Positions 25,812 to 56,357 of a DNA stretch of 64,000 nt are shown in pieces (within the stretch, counting starts at the first letter, position 1; each line of letters starts with the position of its first letter). The stretch is from positions 62,001 through 126,000 of the IMG/VR virus record IMGVR_UViG_3300028920_000022. One strand, given 5' to 3'. Both the position numbers and the translations under genes were made by a program. The notes under the pieces were generated by a model. The model had not been told where the DNA came from. It searched no databases and was given only the letters and a program-made list of their open reading frames with translations.

Positions 25812-26253
25812 CCTTGATCAAATAATCAAATTAGCAACCTCAATACGTAAAAAAGCCGAAGAGGTATGTGCATATCCTCGTTTGGACGGCTGGTGTGGAT
25901 TAACCGCAAAATATATTACCTTGTTAGCTGAGACCCAAGGGTTACACCCTACGTTGGTAGGCGGATTTTTCAAAGATTGGCCACATTGCTGGATAGAATA
26001 TTATGGGAAAATTATTGATATTACCGCTACTCAGTTCAGTCACGATGTACCTAATGTATTGATTACGCACAACAAAGACGAACGTTATATGCAGACCCGC
26101 GGTTGGGGAATGAAAAAACAAAAGGATTCTTATCCATATACAAAAGAATTTCATATTGATTGGCTGCCGATTGGAGAAGCCAAACGTTTGCATGTGGGTA
26201 GAAAAGGTAAGCTTATTGATAATGGTGGTGAGTTTGTTTTTAGGATTTCGTGA
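25804..26253 (+). CDS. transglutaminase/papain-like fold protein
   Basis: GWC...HCW...IIDITATQF putative Cys-His-Asp triad. Confidence 0.55.
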   Translation: MNNLDQIIKLATSIRKKAEEVCAYPRLDGWCGLTAKYITLLAETQGLHPTLVGGFFKDWPHCWIEYYGKIIDITATQFSHDVPNVLITHNKDERYMQTRGWGMKKQKDSYPYTKEFHIDWLPIGEAKRLHVGRKGKLIDNGGEFVFRIS

Positions 26254-26567
26254 ATCTTCGGCGCAAAAAGTTTCAGAAGCTTATTCCTGAATATATTGAG
26301 AGGGATTTTGCTGTTCGAGTAAGGGTGGAAAGGGGAGATTTTGAGTTTCCTGCGATTGTAATTTATATAAAACAAAACACTAATACATTCTATTTACATA
26401 TCAAAAGAAAAGGTGGAACATATAACACTCTATACAGCAGAGCTATAAAAAGAATATATTTAACTACCGGCTCAATAAAAGAAACCTATGCTAGAATAAA
26501 AGAGTTACTTATCGAAGATGGGCTGTTGACCCACGACGAAGTGATAATTCAGGACGTGATTAAGTGA
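26250..26567 (+). CDS. hypothetical protein with C-terminal IQDVIK motif
   Basis: ends DEVIIQDVIK*. Confidence 0.65.
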   Translation: MNLRRKKFQKLIPEYIERDFAVRVRVERGDFEFPAIVIYIKQNTNTFYLHIKRKGGTYNTLYSRAIKRIYLTTGSIKETYARIKELLIEDGLLTHDEVIIQDVIK

Positions 26568-26801
26568 AACGTTTTGCAACAATATTTTTAATTTTATTGT
26601 TGGCGGGATGTTCTATAGTATTCGGAATACTGTTAGAACAACATTATTCTGTTCAGCGAGCTATGCGTATACTTCCCTCTTTACATACGGCAAGTAGGTG
26701 TGCTATATTGCGGGCGCATCTTGAGACATACCAAGAAGGAATGGCAGAGTGGGATATTAGATTAAACGAATGTATCGCATCGATGCCAAACAAATGTTTC
26801 A

Positions 26802-26847
26802 ACAACCTGGATAAATGTGTATCTAAAGGATTATAGAAATGGCTGAC
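26802..26847 (+). repeat. 46-bp direct repeat, copy 2
   Basis: 45/46 identical to 24417-24462. Confidence 0.95.
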
Positions 26848-27029
26848 GGACAGATTGCAGTATTTTATATAGTGGGTGGGTCTCAGGTTGAATTAATCCA
26901 GAACGATGGGAAGTTTGTTGTTTCTACGCAAGTTGGCGAAGAAAAATCTACAGAATTTTTTGAGAGTATAAACGAAGCCACAAGGGTATACTCAAAAAAG
27001 TGTGACAATTTGTTGAGGGGTCGAAACGT

Positions 27030-27416
27030 ATGATTCCTCCAATAATTAAATATATGCGGTTTCTGTTGTCTAACCCGGAAGTTAGTCCCTCTGATGATGA
27101 TTATGTTATATTTGGTGGAACAAAAAACCAAGATCAAAATGAGTATGTCCATCAAGCTCTAAAAGGAATAGACACTTATGAGTTTGAGGAAGAAACCTGT
27201 CGGACTTTGCACAGCTCTTACCCACAATGGTTACAGGATTTTACTATATTGTTGCACGGTTATTCGCGAGACTATATACGAAATGTTGGTAATGATGGTT
27301 CATTATCTAAAGAAGAAAAGAGACACAAGTTGATTTCCAAATTACTCAGCTCATATGATAGTGGTATAATTCCCTCCGCGCCTATATGCACTTGTTCTGA
27401 GGAAAATACTGAATGA
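27030..27416 (+). CDS. hypothetical protein
   Basis: ORF. Confidence 0.6.
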   Translation: MIPPIIKYMRFLLSNPEVSPSDDDYVIFGGTKNQDQNEYVHQALKGIDTYEFEEETCRTLHSSYPQWLQDFTILLHGYSRDYIRNVGNDGSLSKEEKRHKLISKLLSSYDSGIIPSAPICTCSEENTE

Positions 27417-27617
27417 AAAACATGGTCCAAAATTGTATTATGTGTGAGCACTTTAGGTTTGATCCTGGGTGTGGGGATTATTCTGAACTAACGCCAGGAG
27501 AAGATTGGTGTGCTAGTTGTGCTAAAAATCATTGGACTTTAGAGGGGTACAACGTATATACTGACCAATGGCGCAAAACTATATTGAAAGCCGGAGATTG
27601 TCCTGATTTTAGTTAGT

Positions 27618-27998
27618 ATGAGGAAAGTAACAACAATGTCTAAAGAGTGGCTCAAGAAATTAATAGGTAATAACCGCCTACTAGACGCGATTGTTTACAT
27701 CTTAGCTGTATGTTTAATAATGATCGCGATACAGCATTTTATAAACAACAATGTGTGGGAGGGAATAATTTATTTAATCTTTTGTGCGTTTTTGTGGATA
27801 AATGTTAAGCAAAGGCGTCTCATTGACAGCTATATAGACGAAATAATTCCAGAGTATCAAAAACTAAACGACAACACCTTAAAGGTGGCGGAAGAAGCTG
27901 CTGCCAAATACGAATATATTATCAACGAATATAGGAACAAAATCGAAGTTTTACAAGGAAACGCGCCACCAAAAGACAATACCAAATACTTAAATTAA
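27618..27998 (+). CDS. two-TM membrane protein with coiled coil
   Basis: two hydrophobic segments. Confidence 0.65.
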   Translation: MRKVTTMSKEWLKKLIGNNRLLDAIVYILAVCLIMIAIQHFINNNVWEGIIYLIFCAFLWINVKQRRLIDSYIDEIIPEYQKLNDNTLKVAEEAAAKYEYIINEYRNKIEVLQGNAPPKDNTKYLN

Positions 27999-28179
27999 CC
28001 ACGGGACTCAGTGTATCCAGCAAGCCCAACATCAACCATTTACCAACGCCTGGGTCTTTTTGACAGAAAAATAGCGCTATTTTCTACCAGGCAGAGGTTG
28101 GTTTGTGCGGCAGGTTTGTGGCTCTACTTGGGAGTATGCGGTCAGCTACTGTAGGCAGGTTCGAACCCTGTTCCGTGGA
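27999..28179 (+). ncRNA. tRNA-like RNA with a large internal insert
   Basis: acceptor CCACGGG/TCCGTGG plus A; T-arm GCAGG-TTCGAAC-CCTGT; fills the intergenic gap exactly. Confidence 0.65.
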
Positions 28180-28181
28180 CT

Positions 28182-28436
28182 ATGGATTTTGACAAAATAT
28201 ATCAGGAAGTAATAGAACTAGTCGCTATTTCTGGTAAACCAAGTTCTGTTGCGTTAGATAGGTTTCATAGTCATGATTGGGCGATTTCGATTCGAGAATC
28301 TTTTGAGTGTGATGTTAAATTCGAATGCCAAACTTGTGGGTTTTGGTTTTTTTATTGCACGGAAGATAAAAGAGTTAATGCATCTTGGTTTAAATACACT
28401 TGTCAAGAATTAACTATCAAAGATATAATCACTTGA
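28182..28436 (+). CDS. zinc-ribbon protein with C-terminal IKDIIT motif
   Basis: H..CQTCG..CQELTIKDIIT*. Confidence 0.65.
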   Translation: MDFDKIYQEVIELVAISGKPSSVALDRFHSHDWAISIRESFECDVKFECQTCGFWFFYCTEDKRVNASWFKYTCQELTIKDIIT

Positions 28437-28580
28437 GTCTTTGGTATAGTCCTATGGAAAACGAAGAACCACAAGAAGAACTTGAATTAATCATTGTGGA
28501 AAATATTCCAGAAAAAGAAGAAATTGTTTATATTGAGCCAGAAGTGTTGGATAAGATTTTAAAAGAAAAGAAGCCAGATT

Positions 28581-28883
28581 ATGGAACCAATTAATATGCC
28601 GCTAGATTTATGGGAAACCAAAGAGTGGCATCGCAGTCGAGATACCATCAGAAATCTAAAGCATAAAGAAGCGGTACAGCTAAGTGCTGCCGAAGAATTA
28701 CCGGTTAACATTGTTGGTAGTGACGGATATGTTTTAGAAACCGTTGTGGCAAAAACAGGTATTTGTCCTACTTGTTATGGAAACGGAACATCTGGCTGGT
28801 CTGATAAAACGGTTTGTAAAGAGTGTCACGGATCTGGAGAAGTAATTAAGGAAATTGCTGATGCTGATATTCAGAGCGATTAA
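28581..28883 (+). CDS. protein with DnaJ-type CxxCxGxG zinc finger
   Basis: CPTCYGNG and CKECHGSG. Confidence 0.65.
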   Translation: MEPINMPLDLWETKEWHRSRDTIRNLKHKEAVQLSAAEELPVNIVGSDGYVLETVVAKTGICPTCYGNGTSGWSDKTVCKECHGSGEVIKEIADADIQSD

Positions 28884-29106
28884 AAGAACTTTCCTGAAAT
28901 CCTATCAGGTATTACCGTGGATATATCTGGGGTGGTTGTTGGTTGTTATTATGTCCAACACTTGGCATTGGAATTTTATCATTAGTTTTACATCGTTTTA
29001 TTTCTTCCTAATGTTTATACTATATATAGTATTAGATAAACAAATTACCGAGATTGAAAAAGAACTTCAAAAACCTAAAAACAACTAATTATAGGACATT
29101 TTGATT

Positions 29107-29292
29107 ATGAAGCGCAACAAAAAGCGGGAGGACAATCTTAAAACGCGCAATACGTTGTTGGGGTTTGTTGCGCGCAATGATCCTACTCGTTTTAAGGATC
29201 GGATGGTTTTGAGTGAAGATGAGAAGCTCGCTTCTACCCGGGCTAGGCGCAAGGCTGTGTGGCGTCGTGAGGAGAAGTGCGAAACTACATAA
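29107..29292 (+). CDS. small basic protein
   Basis: AGGA SD; Arg/Lys-rich. Confidence 0.6.
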   Translation: MKRNKKREDNLKTRNTLLGFVARNDPTRFKDRMVLSEDEKLASTRARRKAVWRREEKCETT

Positions 29293-29440
29293 TTATTATT
29301 ACGGCAACATCATTGGGCGGATTATTCGGTGGAATCAAACCTGCCATGTTTTGTTTCTTTTTAGTGGGTGGATACTTGGCATGGAAAGAAACAACGCGAG
29401 TTAGTTGACAACGCAAATTGGTTCGTGTATAAAGAAAGTC

Positions 29441-29626
29441 ATGCGAAACATTAGTCAACTGATCGAACAAGTGTTAGCGGATCAAAAGGTTCTCCGGGCA
29501 CATTCTTCTGATGGAACAGAAGTCTGGGTAGCTATTAGTGAGCGCCCTAAAGATGCGTTAGATTTAGTTTTGGACCAGCAACCAATTAGTGCGGAAACTT
29601 TTAGGTTTTATGGGAGCAAAGTATGA
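29441..29626 (+). CDS. hypothetical protein (start corrected, leaderless)
   Basis: promoter TTGACA-17-TATAAA 29405-29433. Confidence 0.6.
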   Translation: MRNISQLIEQVLADQKVLRAHSSDGTEVWVAISERPKDALDLVLDQQPISAETFRFYGSKV

Positions 29627-30261
29627 ATTGGGAACAAAAACTAGCCAAGCTTCAGGAATTAAAATCTGATCTTTTGCGAATGGTTGAACCAGGACATTGG
29701 GTTTGTAATATTCCTGGTGAAATTGGTGGTGACGGAGTATTGCGTAGTGATTTTGGTCAGGGTTCTAAACCATCTGATGCTGTAAATGCTGCATACAATA
29801 TTGTCCAAAACATTCCAAACAAGAAATATATTACCACAACCGGTTGGCAAAAACCGAGACAATATTTTCGTTTGTATGGTGATGAGTGGGTAAGAGTGGT
29901 AGGTTGGGATGAGGCTTGCTAAGCATGACTGTAAAAGAATTGATAGAGGAGCTACAAAAGTTTGATCCTGACCAGTTGGTTGTTGTCAAAGATTGTGGTT
30001 TTCAAGAATTAGAAGTTTACGGAGAATGTGAGCTTACTGAAATAGGTGAAGATCCGTAGTTTACTTGGGATAACCAATGGTATATTTTCTTTTAATTTGG
30101 TTTTTGTGTGGTGTTGTTGGTATTCTCATACAGATCTTGAGAGCCAGAAGGCTTCACAGACCTTTAGTGGCGCCAGTCGTTTTAGTTATTGGTTTTTTCA
30201 TTATGCTTCTTTTGGGACCGGCTTCACTTATTTTTTCCATCTATGAATGGTATACAAAGAA

Positions 30262-31170
30262 ATGAAAATTCAAACCTTTTCCATAGTTACTGGCGGTACC
30301 GCATGTAATGCGCGCTGTCCTTTTTGCGTCAGTAGAATGACTGGCGATATGGATGTTGCTAACTTAAAAGACCCGGAAGTTAATTGGCGCAATTTCCGCA
30401 AAGCATGCAAGTTGGCAGCTAAAGCGGGAGCAACTACTGCAATGCTGACCGGAAAGGGAGAACCTCTGTTGTGGACGGAATTAATTACTCAATATATGGA
30501 ACAATTGTATGAGTCTGATTTGTTTCCAATTATTGAGCTACAAACCAACGGTTTGCTATTACCCACTAAACCAACTAGTTTTGAGACGTCCGGATACGAT
30601 ATGTTCTGTCGGCTACGCAATTGGTATAGTTTAGGGCTGACAACTGTAGCTATTTCTGTAGTTCATTGGAAACCTTCTAAAAATAAATCCATTTATACTC
30701 CAAACAAAGAATATTTTAACCTTCCCGCAGTCATTAAAACACTTCATGATGTTGGGTTTTCAGTACGTTTGTGCTGTGTGATGGCTAAGGATTATGTGGA
30801 CGATTTTTACGACGTCAAAGAAATGATAGAGTTTACAAAGGAACACGGAGTAGAACAGTTAACATTTACTCCGGTTTCGGTGCCATCTATGTCTGAAGAT
30901 CAAGATGCAACCCAGTGGATTTTGGATCATTATCTAGATCCAACCACTGATATTGAGGCAATTATTTCTGGGCTAATTCTGAATGGGGCGATGGAAATTA
31001 TGCAACTTCCTCATGGCGCTCGGGTGTTTGATTTTCATGGACAAAATGTTTGTTTTAATAACTGTCTAAACCCAGGACCGGACGAACTGAACCGTATAAG
31101 AAATCTTATCTTTTTTCCTAACGGAACAGTGCGTTATAAATGGGATTCAGAAGGATCAATTATATTCTAA
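30262..31170 (+). CDS. radical SAM protein
   Basis: CNARCPFC, LTGKGEPLL, ELQTNG. Confidence 0.9.
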   Translation: MKIQTFSIVTGGTACNARCPFCVSRMTGDMDVANLKDPEVNWRNFRKACKLAAKAGATTAMLTGKGEPLLWTELITQYMEQLYESDLFPIIELQTNGLLLPTKPTSFETSGYDMFCRLRNWYSLGLTTVAISVVHWKPSKNKSIYTPNKEYFNLPAVIKTLHDVGFSVRLCCVMAKDYVDDFYDVKEMIEFTKEHGVEQLTFTPVSVPSMSEDQDATQWILDHYLDPTTDIEAIISGLILNGAMEIMQLPHGARVFDFHGQNVCFNNCLNPGPDELNRIRNLIFFPNGTVRYKWDSEGSIIF

Positions 31171-31564
31171 TGGTATGCAAAAGAACACGCAGCAGGGCGC
31201 ATCGTAGAGACCGAAGGCGCGCAAAAGCTAGCAAATGGGCTAGACAGGGTAAGTGTGGAATGAGCGGAAAGGTCGGGCACGGTCCCGGTCCTGCACCACA
31301 GGTGGAAATTAAAAGTCATACGCCAGCCGATTTGTCACCACACGCCAGGCTGAGACGGTTGTTACTTCCCAAACCGGAAGCACTCAGACCAGAAGGAAAA
31401 AGAAAAACTTCTCTAAAAATCAAATTAAACAAGGTCGTTGAACTTCCTGAACTGCCACCAACCGTGGAAAAAGATGGTTGGGAGCAATATCAAATTGACA
31501 TACATAACGAAATGTGTGATAACGAATTTGATCTGGAAAACCTGGGGAGCAAACCAAAACCGCG

Positions 31565-33312: not shown

Positions 33313-33324
33313 TTTGGAGGCAAC

Positions 33325-35932: not shown

Positions 35933-35951
35933 CACAAAATAATGTGGAATT

Positions 35952-36143
35952 ATGCTGCAAATTGGAACACACAAATTAATACCTAAACCCAATGAGATTC
36001 GTTATTATATTTGCGAAGTTTGTGGCATTATTATATATAAGGGAGAAAATACATATATAATTTCTGTTGCGTCAGATGCTATTCTATGTGATCCAACTGA
36101 AGTCACTTGTGATGAATGGATAATCAAATCCGTGATAGAATAA
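35952..36143 (+). CDS. zinc-ribbon protein with C-terminal IKSVIE motif
   Basis: H..CEVCG..CDEWIIKSVIE*. Confidence 0.65.
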   Translation: MLQIGTHKLIPKPNEIRYYICEVCGIIIYKGENTYIISVASDAILCDPTEVTCDEWIIKSVIE

Positions 36144-36183
36144 TTGTTGACAGCATCATGGGTTTATGATAGTCTGCATTCAA

Positions 36184-38409: not shown

Positions 38410-38466
38410 GGTTTTCGCCTTAGGAACCGCTTGACAAGTGCCCGTTCTGATTGGTATTATCAGGGC

Positions 38467-39354
38467 ATGGTAGACAGAATTCAGTGGTATTGCGGTCCGC
38501 GGCTCGATGGCGTGCTCGCTGATCTGCAGGACCTTGAAGACCAGGGAAACCGTGTTGCCGAGCGCAAAAAGGACGGTCGCTGGTGTGGTCTATATGTAGA
38601 TTACTTTAAATCTTGTAAACATAAATTCGAATCTCGTGCTGGAATTGATCATGAAGATTCGCTACTATTGGGTTTAAATAATCTAGATCTTGGTGATTTG
38701 GGTAAAGATACTATTCTAGTTGGGGAACTAGAAGCGGGAACCACAGCAGCTAATATACGGTTTTCTCGATTGGGATACCGACGTATATGGTTATTCGATG
38801 TGGTTTGTTTGAGGGGACATGATTTGCGCCACATGGTTCTACGGGACCGTCGTATTCTATTGAGGGAAACCATTTGGAACATGTTTCCCGCCAAGACGCA
38901 GCAACGATTGCCTTTGGTGGAAGACAGTGAGGATAATTTTGTAGATTTCTACAAGCGTACTTTGGAAGATGGTGACGAGGGTGTGGTCATAAAGAGGTTA
39001 GATATTTCTGGCTGGTCCTATCGTTCGTCTGGGAAAACTGATCATTGGGTCCGGGTTAAGCCCACACGAACGATTGACTATGCCGTTATTGGTCCAGACA
39101 AAACCGACGGAGGAGATTTGACAGCCAATCTTGGGTTGTGGGAAAACGGTAAGTTGCGCAAGGTTCTCAAGTACCAGCTACCTCAAATGACACTTTTGCC
39201 TAACGGACATTTGGCAGAAGAGGGAAGGGTGGTTGAGATGTACGGGCGTGAATTGTTTGAATCAGGATCTCTGCGTTCTGCGCAATTCCTGCGCTGGCGA
39301 GATGATAAAACGCCTGATATGTGTGATGGAACAATTAATATGGTGAGTTTATGA
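38467..39354 (+). CDS. compact ATP-dependent DNA ligase (start corrected, leaderless)
   Basis: motifs I ERKKDG, III GEL, IIIa FDVV, IV EGVVIK, V VKP, VI FLRWRDDK. Confidence 0.82.
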   Translation: MVDRIQWYCGPRLDGVLADLQDLEDQGNRVAERKKDGRWCGLYVDYFKSCKHKFESRAGIDHEDSLLLGLNNLDLGDLGKDTILVGELEAGTTAANIRFSRLGYRRIWLFDVVCLRGHDLRHMVLRDRRILLRETIWNMFPAKTQQRLPLVEDSEDNFVDFYKRTLEDGDEGVVIKRLDISGWSYRSSGKTDHWVRVKPTRTIDYAVIGPDKTDGGDLTANLGLWENGKLRKVLKYQLPQMTLLPNGHLAEEGRVVEMYGRELFESGSLRSAQFLRWRDDKTPDMCDGTINMVSL

Positions 39355-39653
39355 GCTACCTCAGCGGTACGTTTTTACATTTTAATGACAGCGAGACTGG
39401 TTCACACAATATTCCTGCTAACGATCCTCATATTACTGCCTTGTTGGACAGTCATAACTGGTCAGTCGGTCCAGGATATACTCATTTATTGTGCAAAGAT
39501 TGTGGGGCGGCAATTATTGTGAGCGGTAACGAAATATATTTCCATAGCAATGGTAATCCACCAGAAACACGTCCGGCGATGGCTAACCATTGGGTTTCTG
39601 CAGAATATCCAATAGATTGTAAGTCCAATTCAATAAAGCAGGTAATAACATGA
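39351..39653 (+). CDS. zinc-ribbon protein with C-terminal IKQVIT motif
   Basis: H..CKDCG..CKSNSIKQVIT*. Confidence 0.65.
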   Translation: MSYLSGTFLHFNDSETGSHNIPANDPHITALLDSHNWSVGPGYTHLLCKDCGAAIIVSGNEIYFHSNGNPPETRPAMANHWVSAEYPIDCKSNSIKQVIT

Positions 39654-43546: not shown

Positions 43547-44056
43547 ATGGAAGGCACCAAATTAGATCTAAAGCGCGCTCAAATTGATGGGGACAATTAC
43601 GGTCCTTCTGATGTCTATACAGACAAAGTAGAATGTGTGCCTTTTGCACTAGCCGCTTTGATTATCATGTATGTGGAAGACGAAAAAGGTGGACCAAACA
43701 AACTCAAAGAATCAATTGAATGGCGAATGAGAAGTGCCTTGGAAGACAAGGATGAATTTTCCAGGGATAGTAGCAAACTGTGGGCAACAGCTGAGGAACG
43801 AATACTGCAGTTGTATAAGTGGTGGACCGTAGAGCGTCCTAAGTTGATGAATCGTGAAAGTGAATTGTTGGAAAAATGGTCTAAGTCTAGAGGTTTGGAA
43901 GACACATCAGATCTGGAAAATAGACTCAATGCTCCAGACACACCTAGAAGCAGAGAGTTGTTCGAAGCACACACGGATCTGGGAGAACGTATTCGTGCTG
44001 AAATGCAAGAGTTTTGTCATGGAGTAATTGATATTAGGGAGTTTCTTTGGACATAA
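43547..44056 (+). CDS. hypothetical phage protein
   Basis: ORF ending FLWT. Confidence 0.65.
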   Translation: MEGTKLDLKRAQIDGDNYGPSDVYTDKVECVPFALAALIIMYVEDEKGGPNKLKESIEWRMRSALEDKDEFSRDSSKLWATAEERILQLYKWWTVERPKLMNRESELLEKWSKSRGLEDTSDLENRLNAPDTPRSRELFEAHTDLGERIRAEMQEFCHGVIDIREFLWT

Positions 44057-44370
44057 TGGCTAAAAAGAAAAGAACAACTTGGTTACGAATTAATCAATGT
44101 AAAAGGTTTGATTGCGGGGGTTTTGATGTAATTATATACGAATACGGCAATCAAATAAGCCGTGATAGAATTGGTAGAAAGCGAAAATATTTAGCACAGT
44201 ATGATTATTACAATTGCAGAGACGAAGATAGGTTAATTATTTATAGTCGGAAATGTGACACAAAAGAACAGGCGCTAACCATGGTTCAAAACAAAATTAA
44301 ACGCTTGGAAAGACTGTTTAGTGTTAAAAAAATAATGAACGAAATGATAATCAAAGATGTCCTCACCTAG
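44056..44370 (+). CDS. tandem paralog 1 with C-terminal IKDVLT motif
   Basis: similar to the next two ORFs. Confidence 0.7.
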   Translation: MAKKKRTTWLRINQCKRFDCGGFDVIIYEYGNQISRDRIGRKRKYLAQYDYYNCRDEDRLIIYSRKCDTKEQALTMVQNKIKRLERLFSVKKIMNEMIIKDVLT

Positions 44371-44653
44371 ATATCATTTAGCAAGTTATAAGAGAGTTTG
44401 GAGTACGAGCACGTATAGTTTACATGTACTGGAATATAAAAACGTTTTACCCAACCAGAAACTTGGCAAAGAAGTTATATATGCTGCAGAGCTAACTTAC
44501 GATTACCAAAAAGATTATATCAATATAATGAGTAGAAGGTTTAACACACCAGAGGCGGCAATAAAATATGTGTTCAAACGCTTGGTTAAAATATCTTCGC
44601 TAAAGCATGACACCGTCATCAAAGAAATGATGATTAAGGACATCATTACGTAA
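44357..44653 (+). CDS. tandem paralog 2 with C-terminal IKDIIT motif
   Basis: similar to neighbours. Confidence 0.7.
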   Translation: MSSPRYHLASYKRVWSTSTYSLHVLEYKNVLPNQKLGKEVIYAAELTYDYQKDYINIMSRRFNTPEAAIKYVFKRLVKISSLKHDTVIKEMMIKDIIT

Positions 44654-44961
44654 TGAGAAAAAAACCTACGAGGTGGGCATTTTACAATTCTGAGTATCAT
44701 TCTGGAAAAGGTTTTTCTCTAATTATAGTTACTTTTGCTAACGTTATTTCTCGAAATAGATTTGGAAAAAAGAGATGTTATTCTGTAAATTATTATGCTG
44801 ATAACAAATCGAAATCGTATATAATAAGAATCCACACTAAAAAATATGACACCAAACACCAAGCTATTACTGCAGTACGTCGCACATTAAACAGATGCGC
44901 TGGTTATTGTGATGCCGACCGTATTCTAAACGAAATGACTATCAGGGATATAATCACATGA
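44653..44961 (+). CDS. tandem paralog 3 with C-terminal IRDIIT motif
   Basis: similar to neighbours. Confidence 0.7.
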   Translation: MRKKPTRWAFYNSEYHSGKGFSLIIVTFANVISRNRFGKKRCYSVNYYADNKSKSYIIRIHTKKYDTKHQAITAVRRTLNRCAGYCDADRILNEMTIRDIIT

Positions 44962-47495: not shown

Positions 47496-48104
47496 ATGAA
47501 AAAACCTCCAAACATACAGCTGATTAATCACGGAGAAGAAACTGATTCTCCACCATTTTTAACAGTTAAGCGGGTACGTTTACATGCCGAGTATCCTGAC
47601 GGATCGGTTAGTCCAGAATTTCATCATGATATAGTATTGAGAAAGAAAATAGATGCGGTTGTAATTATAGCTTACTATAGAATAAACCATACACCAATGG
47701 TATATTTGCGTAGCGCAATTCGTCCAGCTATTGCGGATAGGTTTGTAGACGGAGGCAATTTGTGGGAACTGCCCGCTGGTTTAATTGAGGAGGGAGAGTC
47801 TCCGGTTGAGTGTGCAGTACGAGAGTTGAAAGAGGAGCTGGGGTTTGATGCAGAAGAAAAGGATTTCAAACCTGTTGGTCCAATCTCTTATACTTCAGTT
47901 GGAATATGTGCTGAACAATTATACTTTTTAAGCGTAGAGGTAGATCCGTCAAGCCAAAATGTTCCCACAGAGGACGGTTCTGCTTTAGAAAAGGGGGCGG
48001 ATATTATCTCAATGTGTGTGTTCGACATTCTTTGTGCATGCCAGCGTGGTGAAATTAAAGATGCGAAAACCGAAATTGGGATACGGAGAATGAGCTTTCT
48101 GTGA
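47496..48104 (+). CDS. Nudix hydrolase (ADP-ribose pyrophosphatase-like)
   Basis: ELPAGLIEEGESPVECAVRELKEELG; IKDAKT. Confidence 0.88.
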   Translation: MKKPPNIQLINHGEETDSPPFLTVKRVRLHAEYPDGSVSPEFHHDIVLRKKIDAVVIIAYYRINHTPMVYLRSAIRPAIADRFVDGGNLWELPAGLIEEGESPVECAVRELKEELGFDAEEKDFKPVGPISYTSVGICAEQLYFLSVEVDPSSQNVPTEDGSALEKGADIISMCVFDILCACQRGEIKDAKTEIGIRRMSFL

Positions 48105-48352
48105 AAAAGTTTTTGATCAATTTTTTAAACGCCAAGGGTCATAATTGTGAATGTCCAAATCAATACAGTTCGATCGTTTATTCCAAGTGTAAAAATTGTG
48201 GGTGTTTGTTTGAATATGATGGAACGACAGTTCGCTGTTGGGGCGGTTTAATATGTGGCACCTATAATCGTCCTATTTACTCTGAAGTGAAAGAATATTC
48301 AGCTGTTTCGCTTTCTTGCCAAGATATAGTAATTAAGGATATTATTTCTTAA
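48101..48352 (+). CDS. zinc-ribbon protein with C-terminal IKDIIS motif
   Basis: H..CKNCG..CQDIVIKDIIS*. Confidence 0.65.
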   Translation: MKKFLINFLNAKGHNCECPNQYSSIVYSKCKNCGCLFEYDGTTVRCWGGLICGTYNRPIYSEVKEYSAVSLSCQDIVIKDIIS

Positions 48353-48636
48353 TGGAATCCGGAATCAAAAATCCAACTCAGTGGAAATGGCGAGAAGGAC
48401 CATTGCCAAATGTTAATGATGCTCCCGACTTGGTACGGGTAGTGGCGTGGATTCCGTATGACGATCAGACTGCAGGATATTTGGTTGTATTTTGTGCTTT
48501 CACTGGCGAAAGTTTTAAAAAAACCTGGGTGTCCTCAAGCGATTGTTCTTCCTTATTTCCGGAACGTGTAAAGTGCTGGGCGGTTGTTTCCGGTTTAGAA
48601 TTTGAAGAGTGGGCAATTAAGGAAATTATTGAGTAG
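48352..48636 (+). CDS. DUF551-like protein with C-terminal IKEIIE motif
   Basis: W.W...PLP...V.CW; ends EEWAIKEIIE*. Confidence 0.55.
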   Translation: MESGIKNPTQWKWREGPLPNVNDAPDLVRVVAWIPYDDQTAGYLVVFCAFTGESFKKTWVSSSDCSSLFPERVKCWAVVSGLEFEEWAIKEIIE

Positions 48637-48675
48637 TGGACAAAACGGTTGCTTTATGCTACTCTGGTTACAATT

Positions 48676-51416: not shown

Positions 51417-51887
51417 GTGTATCTTATACTTGCTGGCTGTTTAATTTTAGTTGGGTTAATTATTTCCTCATTTTTTGGAAAAGCAAGGGATATACAAAAA
51501 ATAGACGCGCAAAATAATAGAGAAGATCCCAAACTAGAAGTGAAAGATATTCCTCCTGGTTGTACGGGTTTAACCTATTCGTTGCACAAAAATCATTCTA
51601 ATCTTCCTTTTGTATATGATTTTTCAAACGCGGAATGTGTCGGTGGCGAGCCTGTTATAATAAATGTTACAGAGGACAAGAAAATTAACCTTATTATTTC
51701 CAAGGCTACATATAAAACATTACTTAGTTCAGCGCCTGAAAACAGTTCGTCCGTTTTGTACGTTAATAACATAACTGTTTTGCCGAGGTTGAAACACTTG
51801 GTGGCAACAATCTCAGCAATCAAAAGACTAAAACATACAAAAGAGATAGTCAGACGAGAACGAATCATCAAGGATGTGGTGGTATAA
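51417..51887 (+). CDS. membrane-anchored protein with C-terminal IKDVVV motif
   Basis: N-terminal TM; ends ERIIKDVVV*. Confidence 0.6.
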   Translation: MYLILAGCLILVGLIISSFFGKARDIQKIDAQNNREDPKLEVKDIPPGCTGLTYSLHKNHSNLPFVYDFSNAECVGGEPVIINVTEDKKINLIISKATYKTLLSSAPENSSSVLYVNNITVLPRLKHLVATISAIKRLKHTKEIVRRERIIKDVVV

Positions 51888-52207
51888 GTGCTACGAGAAA
51901 TTGAGATTGTTTTAAGCGGACCTATTTGTAATTGTAAATCGCAGGACTTGGGGTGGGGTTTTGCAGGAGATTCACTGCGAGTATTTTGTAAACGATGTAA
52001 CACCAATCTATATGTAGAGAAATCTAAAATCCAGGGTTGTGTCGTATGTGATAGCGAATATCCTGACGGTTTAGCGGAGTATACTGAAATAATAGATAAA
52101 TCAGAACCGGCTAATGTATCTGTTTTGTATAGTACAGGCGAAGATGGAAAGCCCGTTAGGCACATTAAATAGTTGACATGCTAGCGCGGTTTTGATATCA
52201 TGCGGGA

Positions 52208-52852
52208 ATGAAATATCCTCGAACATATCATCTGCCGTTCTCTCCCGGGGCAACAAACGATGATAAAACTATGCGGGATATTAGTTCTTTATTGAATGTG
52301 CCCGTAGTTATAACAGAAAAAATGGACGGATCAAACACCTGCTTGATGCGTCAAGAATGTTTTGCCAGAAGCCATGCCGCTTCGCCGGCACACATTTCTT
52401 TTAGCATGTTTAAAGCCTTACATGCTAACATAAAACGTTGTATCCCTACCGGCGTTCAGTTTTTTGGTGAATGGCTGTACGCCAAGCATTCAATAATATA
52501 TGAGAACTTACCGAGCTATTTTATGCTATTTGGGGTTAGAGATCTAGATCATAGTAAATGGTTATCGTGGGAAGCGGTAGAACAATTGTCTGATGTTATT
52601 GGGGTTAATCTAGTTCCTACAATAGCTAGAAACAAAACTTTCAAGACGGAAAAAGAATTAAAGAAATTCATCAACAAGTATCAAAAATTGCCTGGCGAAT
52701 TTGGACAAAGAGAAGGTTTTGTCATTCGGCATATGACTGAGTTCGATAATAGTACATTTCAACAATGTGTTGCAAAGTGGGTACGCGCCGGGCATAATCA
52801 GATTGATGAGCACTGGATGCGCAAAGAAGTGGAGAAAAACGGTTTAAGATGA
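52208..52852 (+). CDS. RNA ligase-family nucleotidyltransferase, leaderless
   Basis: KYPRT.HLP.S, TEKMDGSN, GEW, EGFVIR, AKWVR; promoter 52173-52201. Confidence 0.85.
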   Translation: MKYPRTYHLPFSPGATNDDKTMRDISSLLNVPVVITEKMDGSNTCLMRQECFARSHAASPAHISFSMFKALHANIKRCIPTGVQFFGEWLYAKHSIIYENLPSYFMLFGVRDLDHSKWLSWEAVEQLSDVIGVNLVPTIARNKTFKTEKELKKFINKYQKLPGEFGQREGFVIRHMTEFDNSTFQQCVAKWVRAGHNQIDEHWMRKEVEKNGLR

Positions 52853-53209
52853 GCACCATTCCCGTAATCGTTGACTCAGTTAAGGATACACATTCTAGAT
52901 GTATATATTTTTATATTGAAAGCGGGGCAATTGAAAAAAAGTTTAGTTCGGTTGATGTTATTGAATCAATTTTTGATCAGCATACAGAAGAGATAGACGT
53001 TGCCCAAGTATGGGTTTCCAATTCGGAATTCGATCGTAAACCAAAACGAGGTGATGTTTATCGAGTGTCCAAGAGCTTGCTTACTGCTTTAGTTAATACA
53101 ACCGTTCCTGCTAAATATTCAGCACTAGAAACCAAAGCATACGCTGAATGGTCTGCTTTGCAGGCTAAAAAAGCAGAGGAGAATTCCAGCAAATTACCAA
53201 GGAAATCTG

Positions 53210-53800
53210 ATGCCAAGCGAATATAAAATTGCTTCTAAATTATCCTACGAAGACCTATATCAGGTGCAGGATTATCTTATCGATATGTCAGACAGCACCA
53301 TTACTGCCACAGATGTGTGGAAAGATATTGGAAAAATATTACCTACAGGATTAACGAAGCAGCAATTTCTTAAATCATTTACTGCCAACGTAAAAATGAA
53401 ACGCTTGGCTGGGTTTGTGATTCGGGAAGACAAGGTTCTATTAGATAATATTGAAGTAGCCAAGAAAAACTTGACTCATCTAAAGAATCCGCCTAAAATA
53501 ATAGATGACGTTCAAGAGACGTTTAGGAAACCACTTACTACCATGAATAGAACAAAAAAAGTGTGGATAAAAGACAGCTGTTATCGTGTTCCGATGGCAG
53601 CACAAGACATTCACACCTTAATTGAAAGAGTTTTTCTTGGTAAAAAGGATGCTTCTGGAGATGTAATCCTCAATAAAGAACATTATCAATGTGATACCAA
53701 GCTTTTACACAGATATTTTACAGAATTTTTGGGAATTGGTCCCACACCAGAAGATCCACATGAAGATCAAGAATTACCAGACTGGTTGTTAGAGGGTTGA
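53210..53800 (+). CDS. distant paralog of the 32665 wHTH-like protein
   Basis: L...DL..VQ.YL...IT.TDV...L...F..S...K...LAG pattern shared. Confidence 0.55.
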   Translation: MPSEYKIASKLSYEDLYQVQDYLIDMSDSTITATDVWKDIGKILPTGLTKQQFLKSFTANVKMKRLAGFVIREDKVLLDNIEVAKKNLTHLKNPPKIIDDVQETFRKPLTTMNRTKKVWIKDSCYRVPMAAQDIHTLIERVFLGKKDASGDVILNKEHYQCDTKLLHRYFTEFLGIGPTPEDPHEDQELPDWLLEG

Positions 53801-53802
53801 AA

Positions 53803-54396
53803 ATGAAAGCTTTGTTACTAGTTGATATTCAAAACGATTTTCTGCCAGGCGGTTCGCTGGCGGTAAATGAGGGGGATTTAATTATCCCCGTTGCAAACGA
53901 ATTGATGGCGCCCAGAGTTACAGATCTGGTGGTTGCAACACAAGATTGGCACCCTCATGGACACGGAAGTTTTGCCTCTGCTAATGGTAAAAACCCTTTC
54001 GAAATGGGTGAGTTATCCGGTTTGCCACAAGTAATGTGGCCAGACCACTGTGTTCAGCATACTTTTGGTGCTCAGCTGGCAGATGAATTAAAAGAAGAAA
54101 AAATTCACAAAACATTTGTTAAAGGAACTGATCCTACTGTTGATAGCTATAGTGCGTTTTATGACAATGCGAAGCGCAATTCCACCGGATTAGGCGAGTG
54201 GCTGAAAAAACAGGGGGTTACTGAGCTTATTGTTTTAGGTTTGGCTACCGATTACTGTGTCAAGTTTTCAGTATTGGATGCATTAGAGCTTGGTTTTAAA
54301 GTCAAACTTGTTGTTGATGGCTGCCGGGCGGTTGATCCGGTTGCTGGAGAACGGGCTATAAAAGATATGGAAGAGGCTGGGGCAGAATTAATATGA
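53803..54396 (+). CDS. pncA: nicotinamidase/pyrazinamidase
   Basis: VDIQNDF, QDWHP..H, WPDHC, KG, GLATDYCV. Confidence 0.95.
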   Translation: MKALLLVDIQNDFLPGGSLAVNEGDLIIPVANELMAPRVTDLVVATQDWHPHGHGSFASANGKNPFEMGELSGLPQVMWPDHCVQHTFGAQLADELKEEKIHKTFVKGTDPTVDSYSAFYDNAKRNSTGLGEWLKKQGVTELIVLGLATDYCVKFSVLDALELGFKVKLVVDGCRAVDPVAGERAIKDMEEAGAELI

Positions 54397-55721
54397 CCAC
54401 GTTAGCAATGACCGTAGCAAAAGCAGAAAGCCATCCCAACGCGGATGCGTTGCGTGTGTATCAATTTGCTCTTCCAAACAGGGAAGATACGCTACAGGTT
54501 GTGGCTAATTTAGAAAATGTCTACGAAGTTGGTGACGTTGTGGTAGTGGTTTTGGCAGACGCCACTCTTAAAGACAATACCAATATAAAAGCCTGCAAAC
54601 TGCGCGGAGTGCCTTCGTATGGAATGGCGCTTGGTAAAACCGAAGTTGAAGTAGGTACCGACTTAACTGAGCAATATGAGTTGCCTGTTGTTCAACGCCG
54701 TGGTGTAAACGTAATCAAATGGACCGAAATTGAATCGTTGTATAATGTGCGACGTGGTCTAAAAGAAATGGGTAAAGAAGATACCCATGTGACGTACTTA
54801 GGGAAAGTAAAGTTGCATGGCAGCTGCGCCGGAATTCAATTATTTACTGACGGACGTATTGTTCCACAAAGCCGTACAAGAGTTTTAGATCCGGAAGATG
54901 ATAATATGGGATTTGCCCGCTGGACAGTTTCCATGTACGATTATTTTTCGCAAGTGCGAGCCAGAGCAAACGAGCTAGGTTATGATCATGTCGTTATTTT
55001 TGGAGAGTGGTCGGGGTCTGGGATCAATAAAGGTGTAGCTATATCTAAAATTGATAGAAAGATTCTGGCTGTTTTTGCGGTACAAATTGGCGGATTGGAT
55101 ACGCCAGCGAAACTAGATATTAACGGTACATCTATCCGCAAACTGTTTCCAGAACATGATGACGTATTCGTTTTGCCCTGGTTGGGTGATGCTTTAATGC
55201 TTGATTTTTCTAACAAAGAACAGTTAGAACGGCAGGCTGAGAAGATAAACCAGTTGGTAGAATCGGTAGAAACACGAGATCCTTGGGTTTACGACACTTT
55301 TGGTGTAGACGGTCTTGGCGAAGGTGTGGTAATGTATCCACTCATCGATAAAAAATACCTCGGAAAAGATGGTCCTATCTTTGTGGATAAAATGGAATTT
55401 TCTGACCTAGTATTTAAAGCCAAAGGTGAGAAACACAAAGTGGTCAAAAGCAAAAAAGCAGCCCAGATTGATCCTGAAGTAGCTGCTGGGGTGGAAGATT
55501 TTGTATCTTTGTTTGTGACTGAGCCACGACTAGAACAGTTCGCACAGCAGGTGGGAATTAGTCAGAAAAATACTGGAGAGTTTCTGAAAAGGTTTTGTTC
55601 TGATGTACAAAAAGAAAGTGTTGCTGAGCTGGAAGCTTCTGGTTTAGAATGGAAACAAGTATCAAAACCTGTCGGCACAGCAGCTAGAACATGGTATTTA
55701 AACGAATGTAAAAAACTATGA
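54393..55721 (+). CDS. RNA ligase with N-terminal tRNA-binding-like domain (DRB0094/Rnl2-like)
   Basis: HPNAD.L, KLRG..S.G, KVKLHGS, FGEW, GEGVV, FKAKGEKH. Confidence 0.8.
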   Translation: MTTLAMTVAKAESHPNADALRVYQFALPNREDTLQVVANLENVYEVGDVVVVVLADATLKDNTNIKACKLRGVPSYGMALGKTEVEVGTDLTEQYELPVVQRRGVNVIKWTEIESLYNVRRGLKEMGKEDTHVTYLGKVKLHGSCAGIQLFTDGRIVPQSRTRVLDPEDDNMGFARWTVSMYDYFSQVRARANELGYDHVVIFGEWSGSGINKGVAISKIDRKILAVFAVQIGGLDTPAKLDINGTSIRKLFPEHDDVFVLPWLGDALMLDFSNKEQLERQAEKINQLVESVETRDPWVYDTFGVDGLGEGVVMYPLIDKKYLGKDGPIFVDKMEFSDLVFKAKGEKHKVVKSKKAAQIDPEVAAGVEDFVSLFVTEPRLEQFAQQVGISQKNTGEFLKRFCSDVQKESVAELEASGLEWKQVSKPVGTAARTWYLNECKKL

Positions 55722-55952
55722 AACTAGGCTTGTTTTTAATCGCAATAGCTTTGATTCTTTGCGGTTTGATTCGTTTGGGAAACCAACACGACCGGCAGCA
55801 AGAAAACAAACTAAAAGCTGAAGTAGACAAAATAACACAGCAGCAAAAAGAATATAAAAAGAATTGTGAAAAACATGGTGGAGTTTACGTTCCAATAACT
55901 GAAGGGCTTCAACTACACATGTATTGTATGAGAAAAGATCTTTTTGTTTCCG

Positions 55953-56357
55953 ATGAGAAATAAAGCTAAATGGTACCATTATTTGCTGTCACATTTATAT
56001 AATGTGTGGTCAGTTTTTGTACGCCGGAAATGTTTGCGGGTATTATTTGCTACATCCAGATTATCTATGTTGTATACGCATTTCTGGGTTTGTACTTGTA
56101 CACCATTAGAAATAAAAAACGGAAAATATATAAAACATACTACTTGGTTGTTTAAATGCGAAGAGTGTGGTATTGTTTTAGGTAGAGGTTATTTTGAACT
56201 TGAAAATATTGGTATTGAGCATGGCTACTTGATAAGGGACGATTGTGATAATTTGTGTTCATTTGTGGGAAAATATCATAGCGCTGTAGTGGGAAACCCG
56301 CTGGTTTTGACCGAGCGAACCTGCAGAGATCATCAAGTACAATCAGTATTATTCTGA
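55953..56357 (+). CDS. hypothetical protein with divergent C-terminal VQSVLF motif
   Basis: CEECG..CRDHQVQSVLF*. Confidence 0.55.
   Translation: MRNKAKWYHYLLSHLYNVWSVFVRRKCLRVLFATSRLSMLYTHFWVCTCTPLEIKNGKYIKHTTWLFKCEECGIVLGRGYFELENIGIEHGYLIRDDCDNLCSFVGKYHSAVVGNPLVLTERTCRDHQVQSVLF

What the first reader, a model, noticed from the sequence alone, without database searches (positions are those of the whole stretch)
26250..56357. About 11 unrelated small proteins share one C-terminal tag (E-x-x-I-K-D-I-I-x-stop)
Seen: C-termini DEVIIQDVIK (26567), CQELTIKDIIT (28436), CDEWIIKSVIE (36143), CKSNSIKQVIT (39653), NEMIIKDVLT (44370), KEMMIKDIIT (44653), NEMTIRDIIT (44961), CQDIVIKDIIS (48352), EEWAIKEIIE (48636), RERIIKDVVV (51887) and the more divergent CRDHQVQSVLF (56357). 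The motif always sits at the same distance from the stop. Codons vary synonymously, so conservation is at the protein level rather than a DNA repeat. The bodies differ: zinc ribbons, a three-gene paralog set, a DUF551-like domain, a membrane-anchored protein. I noticed none in the 0-17 kb early cassette region. Inference: a dedicated docking or sorting signal (virion packaging or ejection, binding a shared phage or host hub, or a degron) appended to interchangeable effector domains, i.e. a modular addressed-effector system. I do not recognise it as a named family.
Basis: partly seen in the sequence, partly recalled or inferred. Interest (0 to 1): 0.85.

Follow-up and report, generated by a model that had tools for sequence, protein, structure and literature searches.

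The report
Shared C-terminal helix tag, giant phage
Many otherwise unrelated small proteins of a 459-kb uncultivated marine-sediment phage and its relatives end in the same 12-residue acidic amphipathic helix, placed exactly at the C-terminus; it is most likely a portable docking tag for one shared, still unknown partner.

Summary
All 11 C-termini are in the sequence. A score matrix trained only on copies outside the window picks out the same 11 ORFs: 8 strong, 3 weak.

- **Source:** the window is part of a 458,729-bp phage contig, IMGVR_UViG_3300028920_000022.
- **Scale:** sampled parts of this contig, a 435-kb relative and three smaller contigs hold 227 tags followed directly by a stop, against 11 that are not.
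- **Level of selection:** variation is synonymous or conservative (K/R by AAG, AAA, AGG, CGN), so selection acts on the protein.
- **Not a ribosome-binding-site artefact:** the tag scores the same where no downstream gene follows, and untagged genes with ATGA overlaps have unrelated ends.
- **Bodies differ:** the largest group is a His-Cys3 zinc-ribbon family that includes 5 window genes. A three-gene paralog set shares only the last 10 columns with it. Other carriers include a DUF4116 repeat protein.
- **Structure:** the tag reads as a capped amphipathic helix, and AlphaFold2 predicts a helix there.

Best reading: a modular docking or address helix that needs a free C-terminus. The partner is unknown. 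No Pfam or PHROGs family, GenBank phage or paper matches it.

The parts
26250..26567 (+). Tagged ORF, 105 aa, ending ...LTHDEVIIQDVIK. The tag is codons 26529-26564 and the stop is TGA.
   Evidence: Tag score 23.5 bits. No Pfam or PHROGs family.
28182..28436 (+). Tagged zinc-ribbon ORF, 84 aa, ending ...YTCQELTIKDIIT.
   Evidence: Score 26.5 bits. Aligned in A3, where His, CxxC and the last Cys are invariant.
35952..36143 (+). Tagged zinc-ribbon ORF, 63 aa, ending ...VTCDEWIIKSVIE. It is followed by a TTGACA-17-TAGTCT promoter-like site at 36147.
   Evidence: Score 32.0 bits. AlphaFold2 mean pLDDT 83: six strands plus a helix at residues 53-62, which is the tag. Promoter-like site.
39351..39653 (+). 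Zinc-ribbon family ORF, 100 aa, with a degenerate tail ...IDCKSNSIKQVIT.
   Evidence: Score 4.3 bits. Family membership from A1 and A3.
44056..44370 (+). Paralog 1 of 3, ending ...NEMIIKDVLT. The start at 44056 follows the ENA gene call; the longest ORF starts at 44047. The next gene starts inside the tag, at 44357.
   Evidence: Score 18.7 bits.
44357..44653 (+). Paralog 2 of 3, 98 aa, ending ...KEMMIKDIIT.
   Evidence: Score 20.3 bits.
44653..44961 (+). Paralog 3 of 3, 102 aa, ending ...NEMTIRDIIT.
   Evidence: Score 21.3 bits. AlphaFold2 mean pLDDT 80: four strands, a helix at 68-82 and a helix at 88-97, with the last residues at pLDDT 41-55. hhalign against the zinc family aligns only residues 93-102.
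48101..48352 (+). Tagged zinc-ribbon ORF, 83 aa, GTG start, ending ...LSCQDIVIKDIIS. It is not called as a gene in the ENA copy of this genome.
   Evidence: Score 18.3 bits. Aligned in A3. Gene list.
48352..48636 (+). Tagged ORF with no relatives found, 94 aa, ending ...EEWAIKEIIE.
   Evidence: Score 20.3 bits. No Pfam family. Only itself among 5.8 billion proteins.
51417..51887 (+). ORF of 156 aa with a hydrophobic N-terminus, ending ...RERIIKDVVV. Membership is uncertain because the tail is weak.
   Evidence: Score 6.4 bits. No family.
55944..56357 (+). Zinc-ribbon family ORF just upstream of rIIA, with a degenerate tail ...TCRDHQVQSVLF. The start is uncertain (TTG 55944 or ATG 55953).
   Evidence: Score 4.7 bits. 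CxxCG and the last Cys align in A1.

Best explanation
The tag is a portable, self-contained C-terminal alpha-helix of about 12-13 residues. Its clade consensus is L-[TS]-x-[DE]-E-h-h-I-[KR]-[DEN]-I-I-E-COOH, where h is a hydrophobic residue.

What the sequence shows:
- An N-terminal capping box ([ST] at -12, E at -9).
- An i/i+4 charge ladder (E -9, K -5, E -1).
- A four-residue Ile/Met stripe (-7, -6, -3, -2) on one face.

Inferred mechanism: many different, mostly small proteins use this helix to dock onto one common receptor site. These proteins sit in same-strand gene arrays alongside sigma-70-like promoter sites. The free C-terminus is part of what the receptor recognises. This makes the helix an address or adaptor tag on variable bodies.

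Shown: reality of the tag, selection at the protein level, the lock to the C-terminus, modularity, restriction to one clade, and predicted helicity.

Inferred: that a partner exists, and which one. Candidates are, in no firm order:
- the phage sliding clamp, because T4-family phages already use short hydrophobic-acidic C-terminal epitopes on gp43, gp55 and gp33;
- the prohead core, by analogy with the T4 capsid targeting sequence;
- an AAA+ machine;
- a host hub protein.
For: Position:
- 227 of 238 matches of 12 bits or more, over all six frames of 362 kb from five related contigs, are followed at once by a stop (190 of 200).
- 1.7 Mb of unrelated viral loci gave no ORF-terminal hits beyond the ones that triggered their retrieval, apart from a few isolated high-scoring single hits (for example L102, L139, L163, L178) that were not followed up.

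Protein-level selection:
- Ile is encoded by ATA, ATT and ATC, Lys/Arg by AAG, AAA, AGG, AGA and CGN, Asp by GAT and GAC.
- c36143 and a paralog share 36% body identity but 100% tag identity, with 5 of 12 identical residues on different codons.

Independence from the downstream gene:
- 32 carriers with no ATG-initiated downstream ORF of 40 codons or more starting within 25 nt (GTG and TTG starts were not searched) score 23-25 bits on average, against 25.7-27.2 for the rest.
- Untagged genes with ATGA overlaps have unrelated ends.
- The L122 lineage has AAAAAT at the -5/-4 codons, so it has no Shine-Dalgarno-like sequence there.

Modularity:
- 97 blastp body clusters.
- hhalign aligns only the last 10 columns between two families.
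- One carrier has a DUF4116 repeat body, and a radical SAM and a DUF4419 protein have near-tags.
- Long multi-repeat zinc-ribbon proteins match the body of the zinc family but not the tag.
- A 7-residue insert can separate the last zinc Cys from the tag, yet the distance to the C-terminus stays fixed.

Helix: AlphaFold2 predicts a helix over the tag on two different bodies.

Lineage-specific consensus on unrelated bodies, as expected from co-evolution with one partner:
- position -7 is I in genome A and M in genome B;
- position -4 is D or E in A, D only in B, and mostly N in L122.

Precedents in T4: PMC3012670, PMC9026906 and PMC2988020.
Against: - No partner was identified, and no expression, localisation or interaction data exist, because the phage is uncultivated and comes from marine sediment.
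- About half the carriers are one zinc-ribbon family in which the last zinc ligand sits at the helix N-cap. In that family the helix could simply be part of the fold.
- More than 100 carriers per genome is far more than any known tag system in phages.
- The last residue varies in the window (T, S, E, K). That sits uneasily with strict recognition of a terminal Glu.
- The sampled regions hold no replisome or head genes, so neither the clamp nor the capsid idea could be tested.
Confidence: 0.58

Rival explanations
1. The helix is only the conserved structural end of one hugely expanded, fast-evolving family of small proteins. It would be part of the fold, for example the helix of a treble-clef-like His-Cys3 zinc ribbon, and the 'unrelated' bodies would be diverged paralogs. 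On this view there is no addressing function.
For: - Five of the 11 window carriers, all 16 in L122 and 26 aligned members share invariant His, CxxC and Cys. The last Cys usually lies directly before the tag.
- The profile finds 619 clusters, many of them small proteins with the same end.
- AlphaFold2 gives the helix pLDDT 70-85 in c36143.
- Phage G has a comparable expansion of about 35 zinc ribbons (PMC7824862).
Against: - hhalign finds no body similarity between the paralog trio and the zinc family.
- A DUF4116 repeat protein carries the tag, and radical SAM and DUF4419 proteins carry near-tags.
- Related zinc-ribbon repeats in long proteins lack the tag.
- Spacing from the zinc Cys varies by 7 residues, while spacing to the C-terminus does not vary.
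- The tail has low confidence on the trio body.
- A structural helix has no need to end exactly at the stop.
Confidence: 0.2
2. The peptide is a by-product or tool of translational coupling. The 3' end of each gene would be the ribosome-binding region of the next gene (AAGGA plus an AT-rich spacer plus an ATGA overlap), or the nascent peptide would modulate termination and re-initiation.
For: - About 55% of carriers have an ATGA stop/start overlap, against about 19% of other ORFs.
- AAG-GA is over-used at the K-D codons. In the scan-selected loci AAG is 62-64% in tags against 11-19% in bodies. In unbiased loci it is 39% against 22%.
- A fixed distance from the stop is also the geometry expected of an exit-tunnel peptide.
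Against: - Variation is confined to third codon positions and to conservative amino-acid changes, including CGN for Arg.
- The distance is fixed to the stop and not to the next start, which can be at -13, -4, -1 or further downstream.
- The tag is equally strong where no downstream ATG-initiated ORF follows, or where a tRNA gene follows.
- Untagged genes with ATGA overlaps have unrelated ends, and only about a third show a Shine-Dalgarno-like sequence.
- The L122 lineage has no Shine-Dalgarno-like sequence in the tag.
Confidence: 0.07
3. The helices bind each other. The tag would be a self-association module that gathers the tagged proteins into mixed oligomers or an assembly, rather than docking onto a separate receptor.
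For: The Ile-rich i, i+1, i+4, i+5 stripe with flanking charges resembles a coiled-coil or helical-bundle surface (read from the sequence). A single consensus per genome would suit mutual recognition.
Against: - Twelve residues is short for a stable coiled coil.
- The net charge is strongly negative, which disfavours self-pairing.
- Self-association does not explain why the helix must end at the C-terminus.
- Nothing tested here bears on it directly.
Confidence: 0.1

Closest known systems
Capsid targeting sequence (CTS) of the T-even phage internal proteins (IPI, IPII, IPIII, Alt)
   Same: A short terminal peptide is the only conserved part of a diverse set of small phage proteins, and it addresses them to one site, the prohead core (PMC3012670, PMC9026906). 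The phage here is distantly T4-related: it has an rIIA homolog. The tag ends in I-x-E, which resembles the product side of the gp21 cleavage motif.
   Different: - The CTS is N-terminal, 10-19 residues long and is cleaved off. This tag is C-terminal, with no cleavage site between body and tag.
- The CTS is carried by a handful of proteins, not more than 100.
- The tagged genes here lie among sigma-70-like promoter sites, and T4-type late promoters are not enriched.
- Presence in the virion is untested.
Sliding-clamp-binding C-terminal epitopes of T4 gp43, gp55 and gp33
   Same: [quoted passage not shown] In gp55 the motif is joined to the body by a divergent linker (PMC2988020). The tag pattern E-x-x-I-x-x-I-I resembles a PIP-box layout (my own knowledge).
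   Different: - The T4 motif is SLDFL[FY]. It is not helical-capped and not always at the very end: gp55 continues with EAND.
- It is carried by three replication or transcription proteins, not by many small orphan proteins.
- The clamp, polymerase, gp55 and gp33 homologs of this phage were not in the sampled DNA.
Encapsulin cargo-loading peptides and bacterial microcompartment encapsulation peptides
   Same: Short terminal tags on unrelated cargo proteins bind a shell protein. In encapsulins the tags are often C-terminal, and in microcompartments they are amphipathic helices. Encapsulin shells share the HK97 fold of phage capsids. (All from my own knowledge.)
   Different: - Encapsulin tags are Gly/Ser/Leu-rich and bind in an extended form.
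- Microcompartment peptides need not sit at the exact terminus.
- Neither is known in phages, and no shell gene is linked to the tag here.
C-terminal degrons of AAA+ proteases (ssrA-type tags)
   Same: They have a strict requirement for the extreme C-terminus and a free carboxylate, and they are transferable to any protein (my own knowledge).
   Different: Known degrons end in small non-polar residues such as LAA, and acidic ends block recognition. This tag ends in Glu, Lys or Thr and is a capped helix.
Lineage-specific zinc-ribbon expansion in Bacillus phage G
   Same: A giant phage carries about 35 copies of one small zinc-ribbon protein of unknown role (PMC7824862).
   Different: No shared C-terminal tag is reported for it. 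tblastn of a tagged zinc-ribbon protein against 50,697 GenBank phage records finds nothing.

Membership tests
T4-type capsid targeting sequence | A short terminal peptide is the only part shared by otherwise diverse small phage proteins. | tested here: met
   97 body clusters among 138 carriers. Only the tag aligns between families.
T4-type capsid targeting sequence | N-terminal propeptide removed by the prohead protease at (L/I)-x-E. | tested here: not met
   The tag is at the C-terminus. No L/I-x-E site lies between body and tag. The I-x-E is the very end.
T4-type capsid targeting sequence | Carriers are present in virions and are expressed late. | tested here: inconclusive
   No proteomic or RNA data. 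TATAAATA is not enriched. There are 12 TTGACA-N16-18-TAnnnT sites, all on the coding strand, against 3.1 expected.
T4-family sliding-clamp-binding epitope | Hydrophobic and acidic short motif at the C-terminus of diverse proteins. | tested here: met
   Consensus ...DE-h-h-IKDIIE-COOH.
T4-family sliding-clamp-binding epitope | The same motif on the phage's own polymerase, gp55 and gp33 homologs, and binding to the gp45 homolog. | not tested
   phmmer with T4 gp43, gp44, gp45, gp55, gp62 and others found no homolog in the 362 kb sampled.
Shine-Dalgarno / translational-coupling region read as peptide | Conservation at the nucleotide level, at a fixed distance from the downstream start codon. | tested here: not met
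   Third codon positions vary, and Arg is encoded by CGN. The distance is fixed to the stop. The tag is retained where no downstream ATG-initiated ORF starts within 25 nt.
ssrA-like C-terminal degron | Extreme C-terminal position. | tested here: met
ssrA-like C-terminal degron | Small non-polar last residues (LAA-like). | tested here: not met
   The last residue is E in most copies, and T, S, K or E in the window.
Encapsulin cargo-loading peptide | Gly/Ser/Leu-rich extended C-terminal peptide, with a shell gene adjacent. | tested here: not met
   The tag is an acidic predicted helix. No shell-like gene was found among the annotated neighbours.
Any curated protein family (Pfam, PHROGs) | A significant match of the carriers or of the tag. 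| tested here: not met
   No hit at E<=0.01 for 10 window carriers. Of 36 larger carriers, one matches DUF4116 (the same protein also matches RLIP76_Ral-bd) and one matches Zn_ribbon_8, in both cases through the body.
His-Cys3 zinc-ribbon family (28436, 36143, 39653, 48352, 56357) | His, CxxC and a last Cys in conserved order and alignment. | tested here: met
   Invariant H7, C21, C24 and C53 in 26 sequences. 56357 aligns in A1. 619 profile hits.

The most novel reading that the evidence does not exclude
Giant T4-related phages of marine sediments use a proteome-scale C-terminal address code. One 12-residue helix would route well over a hundred different small proteins per genome to a single phage-built destination, such as the prohead interior for injection or the clamp as a toolbelt, or to a host machine. 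This would be a sorting system with no described counterpart in bacterial viruses.
Probability: 0.3. Interest if true: 0.92.

Novelty: new variant of a known kind. Interest (0 to 1): 0.8.

Why it matters
If the helix is an address tag, it gives a direct handle on two problems. First, it labels a large block of giant-phage 'dark matter' genes: about 7% of ORFs in this window and a larger share in the scan-selected loci. They would form one functional class that can be pulled down through one partner. Second, it would be a small, transferable, sequence-defined tag for delivering or recruiting cargo. It is also a clear case of overlapping constraints, with a protein motif and the next gene's initiation region sharing the same bases. 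The number of carriers per genome is far above any known phage tag system.

Tried and rejected
- **Chance or base composition.** Rejected by shuffles, six-frame controls and 1.7 Mb of unrelated viral loci.
- **DNA repeat, recombination site or homing site.** Rejected because third codon positions vary freely.
- **Ribosome-binding-site artefact.** Rejected as the cause, though a weak AAG preference remains.
- **Recoded stop or read-through.** All three stop codons follow tags, and genes tile well in the standard code.
- **Close relatives in GenBank phages.** None by megablast or tblastn.
- **Homologs of the paralog trio and of 48636 among 5.8 billion proteins.** Only the genome's own copies.
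- **Foldseek of the c36143 model against the PDB.** Nothing significant. The ESM Atlas gave only unnamed viral clusters.
- **Literature.** No paper contains the motif or the Pfam names RYYR-CCHC or DUF7128.
- **T4 replisome homologs in the sampled DNA,** sought to test the clamp idea. None found.
- **RNA sequencing runs holding this DNA.** None listed, so no reads were laid.

Full report
**1. Is it there?**

On a tiling of 160 + strand ORFs (20,344 residues), the loose pattern [IV][KRQ][DESQ][IV][ILV] occurs 12 times. Eleven of these lie exactly one residue before the stop. None of 454 minus-strand ORFs ends this way. Degenerate DNA forms of the motif give 4 and 6 matches, against 0.00 and 0.04 in dinucleotide shuffles.

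**2. Where the window comes from, and the real size of the phenomenon**

The window is bases 62,001-126,000 of IMGVR_UViG_3300028920_000022, a 458,729-bp viral contig that I call genome A. It comes from a marine sediment metagenome. All genes but one run on the + strand. It encodes an rIIA homolog with 26% identity to T4. It also encodes Ku, two ATP-dependent DNA ligases, RNA ligases, NAD kinase and four tRNAs. It has no close relative among 50,697 GenBank phage records.

A collection scan with a back-translated tag returned 119 stretches. These were dominated by genome A and by a second contig, IMGVR_UViG_3300027740_000003 (435,004 bp, genome B). A 38-kb contig also appeared (L117, genome C). 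Further relatives came from a protein look-up and from a second scan:
- L122, ENA ERZ27294187 k99_436429: 16 carriers in 20 kb.
- L162: 4 carriers in 2.2 kb.

I built a 12-residue score matrix only from copies outside the window. At 12 bits or more, over every position of all six frames of the 362 kb sampled from the five contigs, there are 238 matches. Of these, 227 are followed immediately by a stop codon: A 82, B 104, C 21, L122 16, L162 4 (earlier count 190 of 200).

About 1.7 Mb of unrelated viral loci were fetched by the same scans. In them, the only high-scoring ORF ends were the hits that triggered the fetch, plus a few isolated single hits that I did not follow up. The simple pattern misses many further copies with M, A, E or W at -5, or N or G at -4.

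The clade consensus is L-[TS]-x-[DE]-E-h-h-I-[KR]-[DEN]-I-I-E-stop, where h is hydrophobic. The window copies are among the more degenerate ones.

**3. Protein level or DNA level?**

In 43 copies from A and 69 from B, nearly all variation is at third codon positions or is conservative:
- Ile is encoded by ATA, ATT and ATC.
- Lys/Arg is encoded by AAG, AAA, AGG, AGA, CGC, CGT and CGG.
- Asp is encoded by GAT and GAC.

c36143 and a paralog have 36% body identity but 12 of 12 identical tag residues, five of them on different codons. Bodies show dN/dS well below 1 wherever dS is not saturated. This is purifying selection on the peptide. It excludes a DNA repeat or a recombination site.

**4. Is it the next gene's ribosome-binding site?**

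This was the main mundane rival. In favour:
- About 55% of carriers end in A-TGA with the next ATG overlapping, against about 19% of other ORFs.
- AAG (making AAGGA) is over-used at the Lys codon: 62-64% against 11-19% in the scan-selected loci, and 39% against 22% in unbiased loci.

Against:
- The motif is fixed relative to the stop, while the next start lies at -13, -4, -1 or further downstream.
- Thirty-two carriers with no ATG-initiated downstream ORF starting within 25 nt keep the tag at the same strength, some of them followed by a tRNA gene or a promoter-like site. Their mean is 23-25 bits, against 25.7-27.2 for the rest. GTG and TTG starts were not searched in that test.
- Genuine non-carriers with ATGA overlaps have unrelated ends, and only about a third show a Shine-Dalgarno-like sequence.
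- The L122 lineage has AAAAAT at the -5/-4 codons, which is no Shine-Dalgarno sequence at all.

So the initiation region of the next gene shares these bases and mildly biases codon choice. It does not create the peptide.

**5. Are the carriers one family?**

Partly.
- Five window carriers (28436, 36143, 39653, 48352, 56357) belong to a His...CxxC(G)...Cys zinc-ribbon family. A 26-sequence alignment from A, B and C has invariant H, C, C and C.
- A profile of that alignment finds 619 clusters at E<=1e-3 among 1.84 billion representatives. Forty of the small (63-101 aa) hits were fetched, and nearly all end in ...C-x-[DE]-h-h-I-[KR]-x-I-I-[EK].
- The same search finds long multi-repeat zinc-ribbon proteins with Pfam RYYR-CCHC and DUF7128 signatures. 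These match only the body, not the tag.
- In some members, seven extra residues separate the last Cys from the tag, yet the tag still ends at the C-terminus.
- The three genes 44056-44961 are paralogs. hhalign of their profile against the zinc family aligns only the last 10 columns.
- Over all genomes, 138 pattern-defined carriers fall into 97 blastp clusters once the tag is removed.
- Of 36 larger carriers, Pfam recognises only a DUF4116 repeat protein and one zinc ribbon.
- A 495-aa radical SAM enzyme and a 410-aa DUF4419 protein end in the tag minus its last residue.
- The trio and 48636 have no relatives outside their own genome among 5.8 billion proteins. The 'DUF551-like' label is not supported.

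**6. What the tag looks like**

Read directly from the consensus:
- [ST] at -12 with E at -9 forms a helix capping box.
- L at -13 with the hydrophobic residue at -8 forms a hydrophobic staple.
- E(-9), K(-5) and E(-1) form an i/i+4 charge ladder.
- Positions -7, -6, -3 and -2 form one Ile/Met stripe.

Together these describe a short, autonomous, acidic amphipathic helix.

AlphaFold2 places a helix on the tag in two different bodies:
- c36143: mean pLDDT 83, six strands and then a helix at residues 53-62.
- c44961: mean pLDDT 80, a four-stranded sheet, a helix at 68-82 and a helix at 88-97, with the last residues at pLDDT 41-55 and so not confidently packed.

Foldseek finds no solved analog.

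**7. Context**

TTGACA-N16-18-TAnnnT occurs 12 times in the window. All 12 are on the coding strand, against 3.1 expected, and no shuffle reaches 12. One such site lies directly after the stop of c36143. The T4 late motif TATAAATA is not enriched. The tagged genes therefore lie among sigma-70-like promoter sites of the kind used for host-polymerase (early-type) transcription. This is an inference, not a measurement.

**8. Mechanism**

The facts to be explained are:
- strong purifying selection on a capped amphipathic helix;
- an almost absolute requirement that it end the protein;
- unrelated bodies;
- restriction to one clade;
- a consensus that shifts as a block between genomes. Position -7 is I in A and M in B. 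Position -4 is D or E in A, D in B, and mostly N in L122.

These are best explained by docking of the helix, with its free carboxylate, onto one common site that co-evolves with it.

T4 biology offers two precedents. First, the capsid targeting sequence is the only conserved part of the hypervariable internal proteins (PMC3012670, PMC9026906). Second, gp43, gp55 and gp33 share 'hydrophobic and acidic' C-terminal epitopes that bind the sliding clamp (PMC2988020; the T4 ends are shown). Neither is a membership:
- The capsid targeting sequence is N-terminal and is cleaved off.
- The T4 clamp motif is SLDFL[FY].

The relevant genes of this phage were not in the sampled DNA. I therefore commit to 'shared docking or address helix' at about 0.58 and leave the partner open.

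The rivals are: a structural end of one expanded family (0.2), self-association (0.1) and translational coupling (0.07).

**9. Novelty**

No Pfam or PHROGs family, no GenBank phage and no paper carries this motif. The kind of thing, a terminal addressing peptide on diverse phage proteins, is known. The C-terminal helical form, the strict terminal lock and the number of carriers per genome are new.

Noticed in passing
window:46016-46087 and window:46556-47278: A tRNA-Ile with anticodon TAT, which reads ATA, lies about 470 bases upstream of a PP-loop (TilS-like, PF01171) gene. ATA is the commonest Ile codon at tag positions -3 and -2 in the copies of genome A outside the window (54-72%, against 39% in the bodies).
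   Followed up: partly
window:33325-34137, 38431-39354, 59800-61131: A bacterial-type Ku (TIGR02772, E 1e-58) and two ATP-dependent DNA ligase genes. Together they look like a phage-borne end-joining set.
   Followed up: partly
window:1072, 1811, 16375, 23697, 32596, 36147, 36987, 38431, 39885, 50160, 52173, 58600: Twelve TTGACA-N16-18-TAnnnT sites, all on the coding strand, against 3.1 expected on both strands. The T4 late motif TATAAATA is not enriched.
   Followed up: partly
window:48101-48352: This tagged zinc-ribbon ORF (GTG start overlapping the previous stop) is missing from the gene calls of the ENA copy of the genome, although it aligns with the family's invariant His and Cys residues.
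   Followed up: yes
L037:2687-4171 and L044:8895-10124: A 495-aa radical SAM protein (genome A) and a 410-aa DUF4419 protein (genome B) end in the tag minus its last residue (...LTPEERIIKEIV and ...ELHEFFVKDVV). So the tag is not confined to small proteins.
   Followed up: partly
L172:3731-6579; L097:3465-4766 with L158:124-1458; L059:189-1499: Genome A has two AAA+ ATPase genes (generic AAA/AAA_5 Pfam hits) and two DUF2201 genes (VWA plus putative metallopeptidase). One AAA+/DUF2201 pair is adjacent (L172); the other two genes lie a few kb apart. All sit inside tagged arrays, and one DUF2201 start overlaps the stop of a tagged gene. Genome B has a similar AAA+ gene. They are possible receptor candidates, but this was not tested.
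   Followed up: no
P0055 and P0066 (metagenomic proteins found): These are two-unit fusions of tagged zinc-ribbon proteins. The first tag is internal and runs straight into the second unit, as if a stop had been lost at an ATGA junction.
   Followed up: partly
window:1-20000 against the rest: G+C is 42-51% in the first 20 kb and 36-43% afterwards. The first part holds an ArdC-like antirestriction / zincin protein (7653-8537) and no tagged gene.
   Followed up: no
window:44958-45440 and 54393-55721: An OGFr_N-domain protein lies directly after the tagged paralog trio. Further on is an RNA ligase fused to a tRNA-binding domain.
   Followed up: no
window:22454-23251 (- strand): This is the only long ORF on the minus strand (265 aa). 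It lies next to tRNA-Lys and has no Pfam match.
   Followed up: partly
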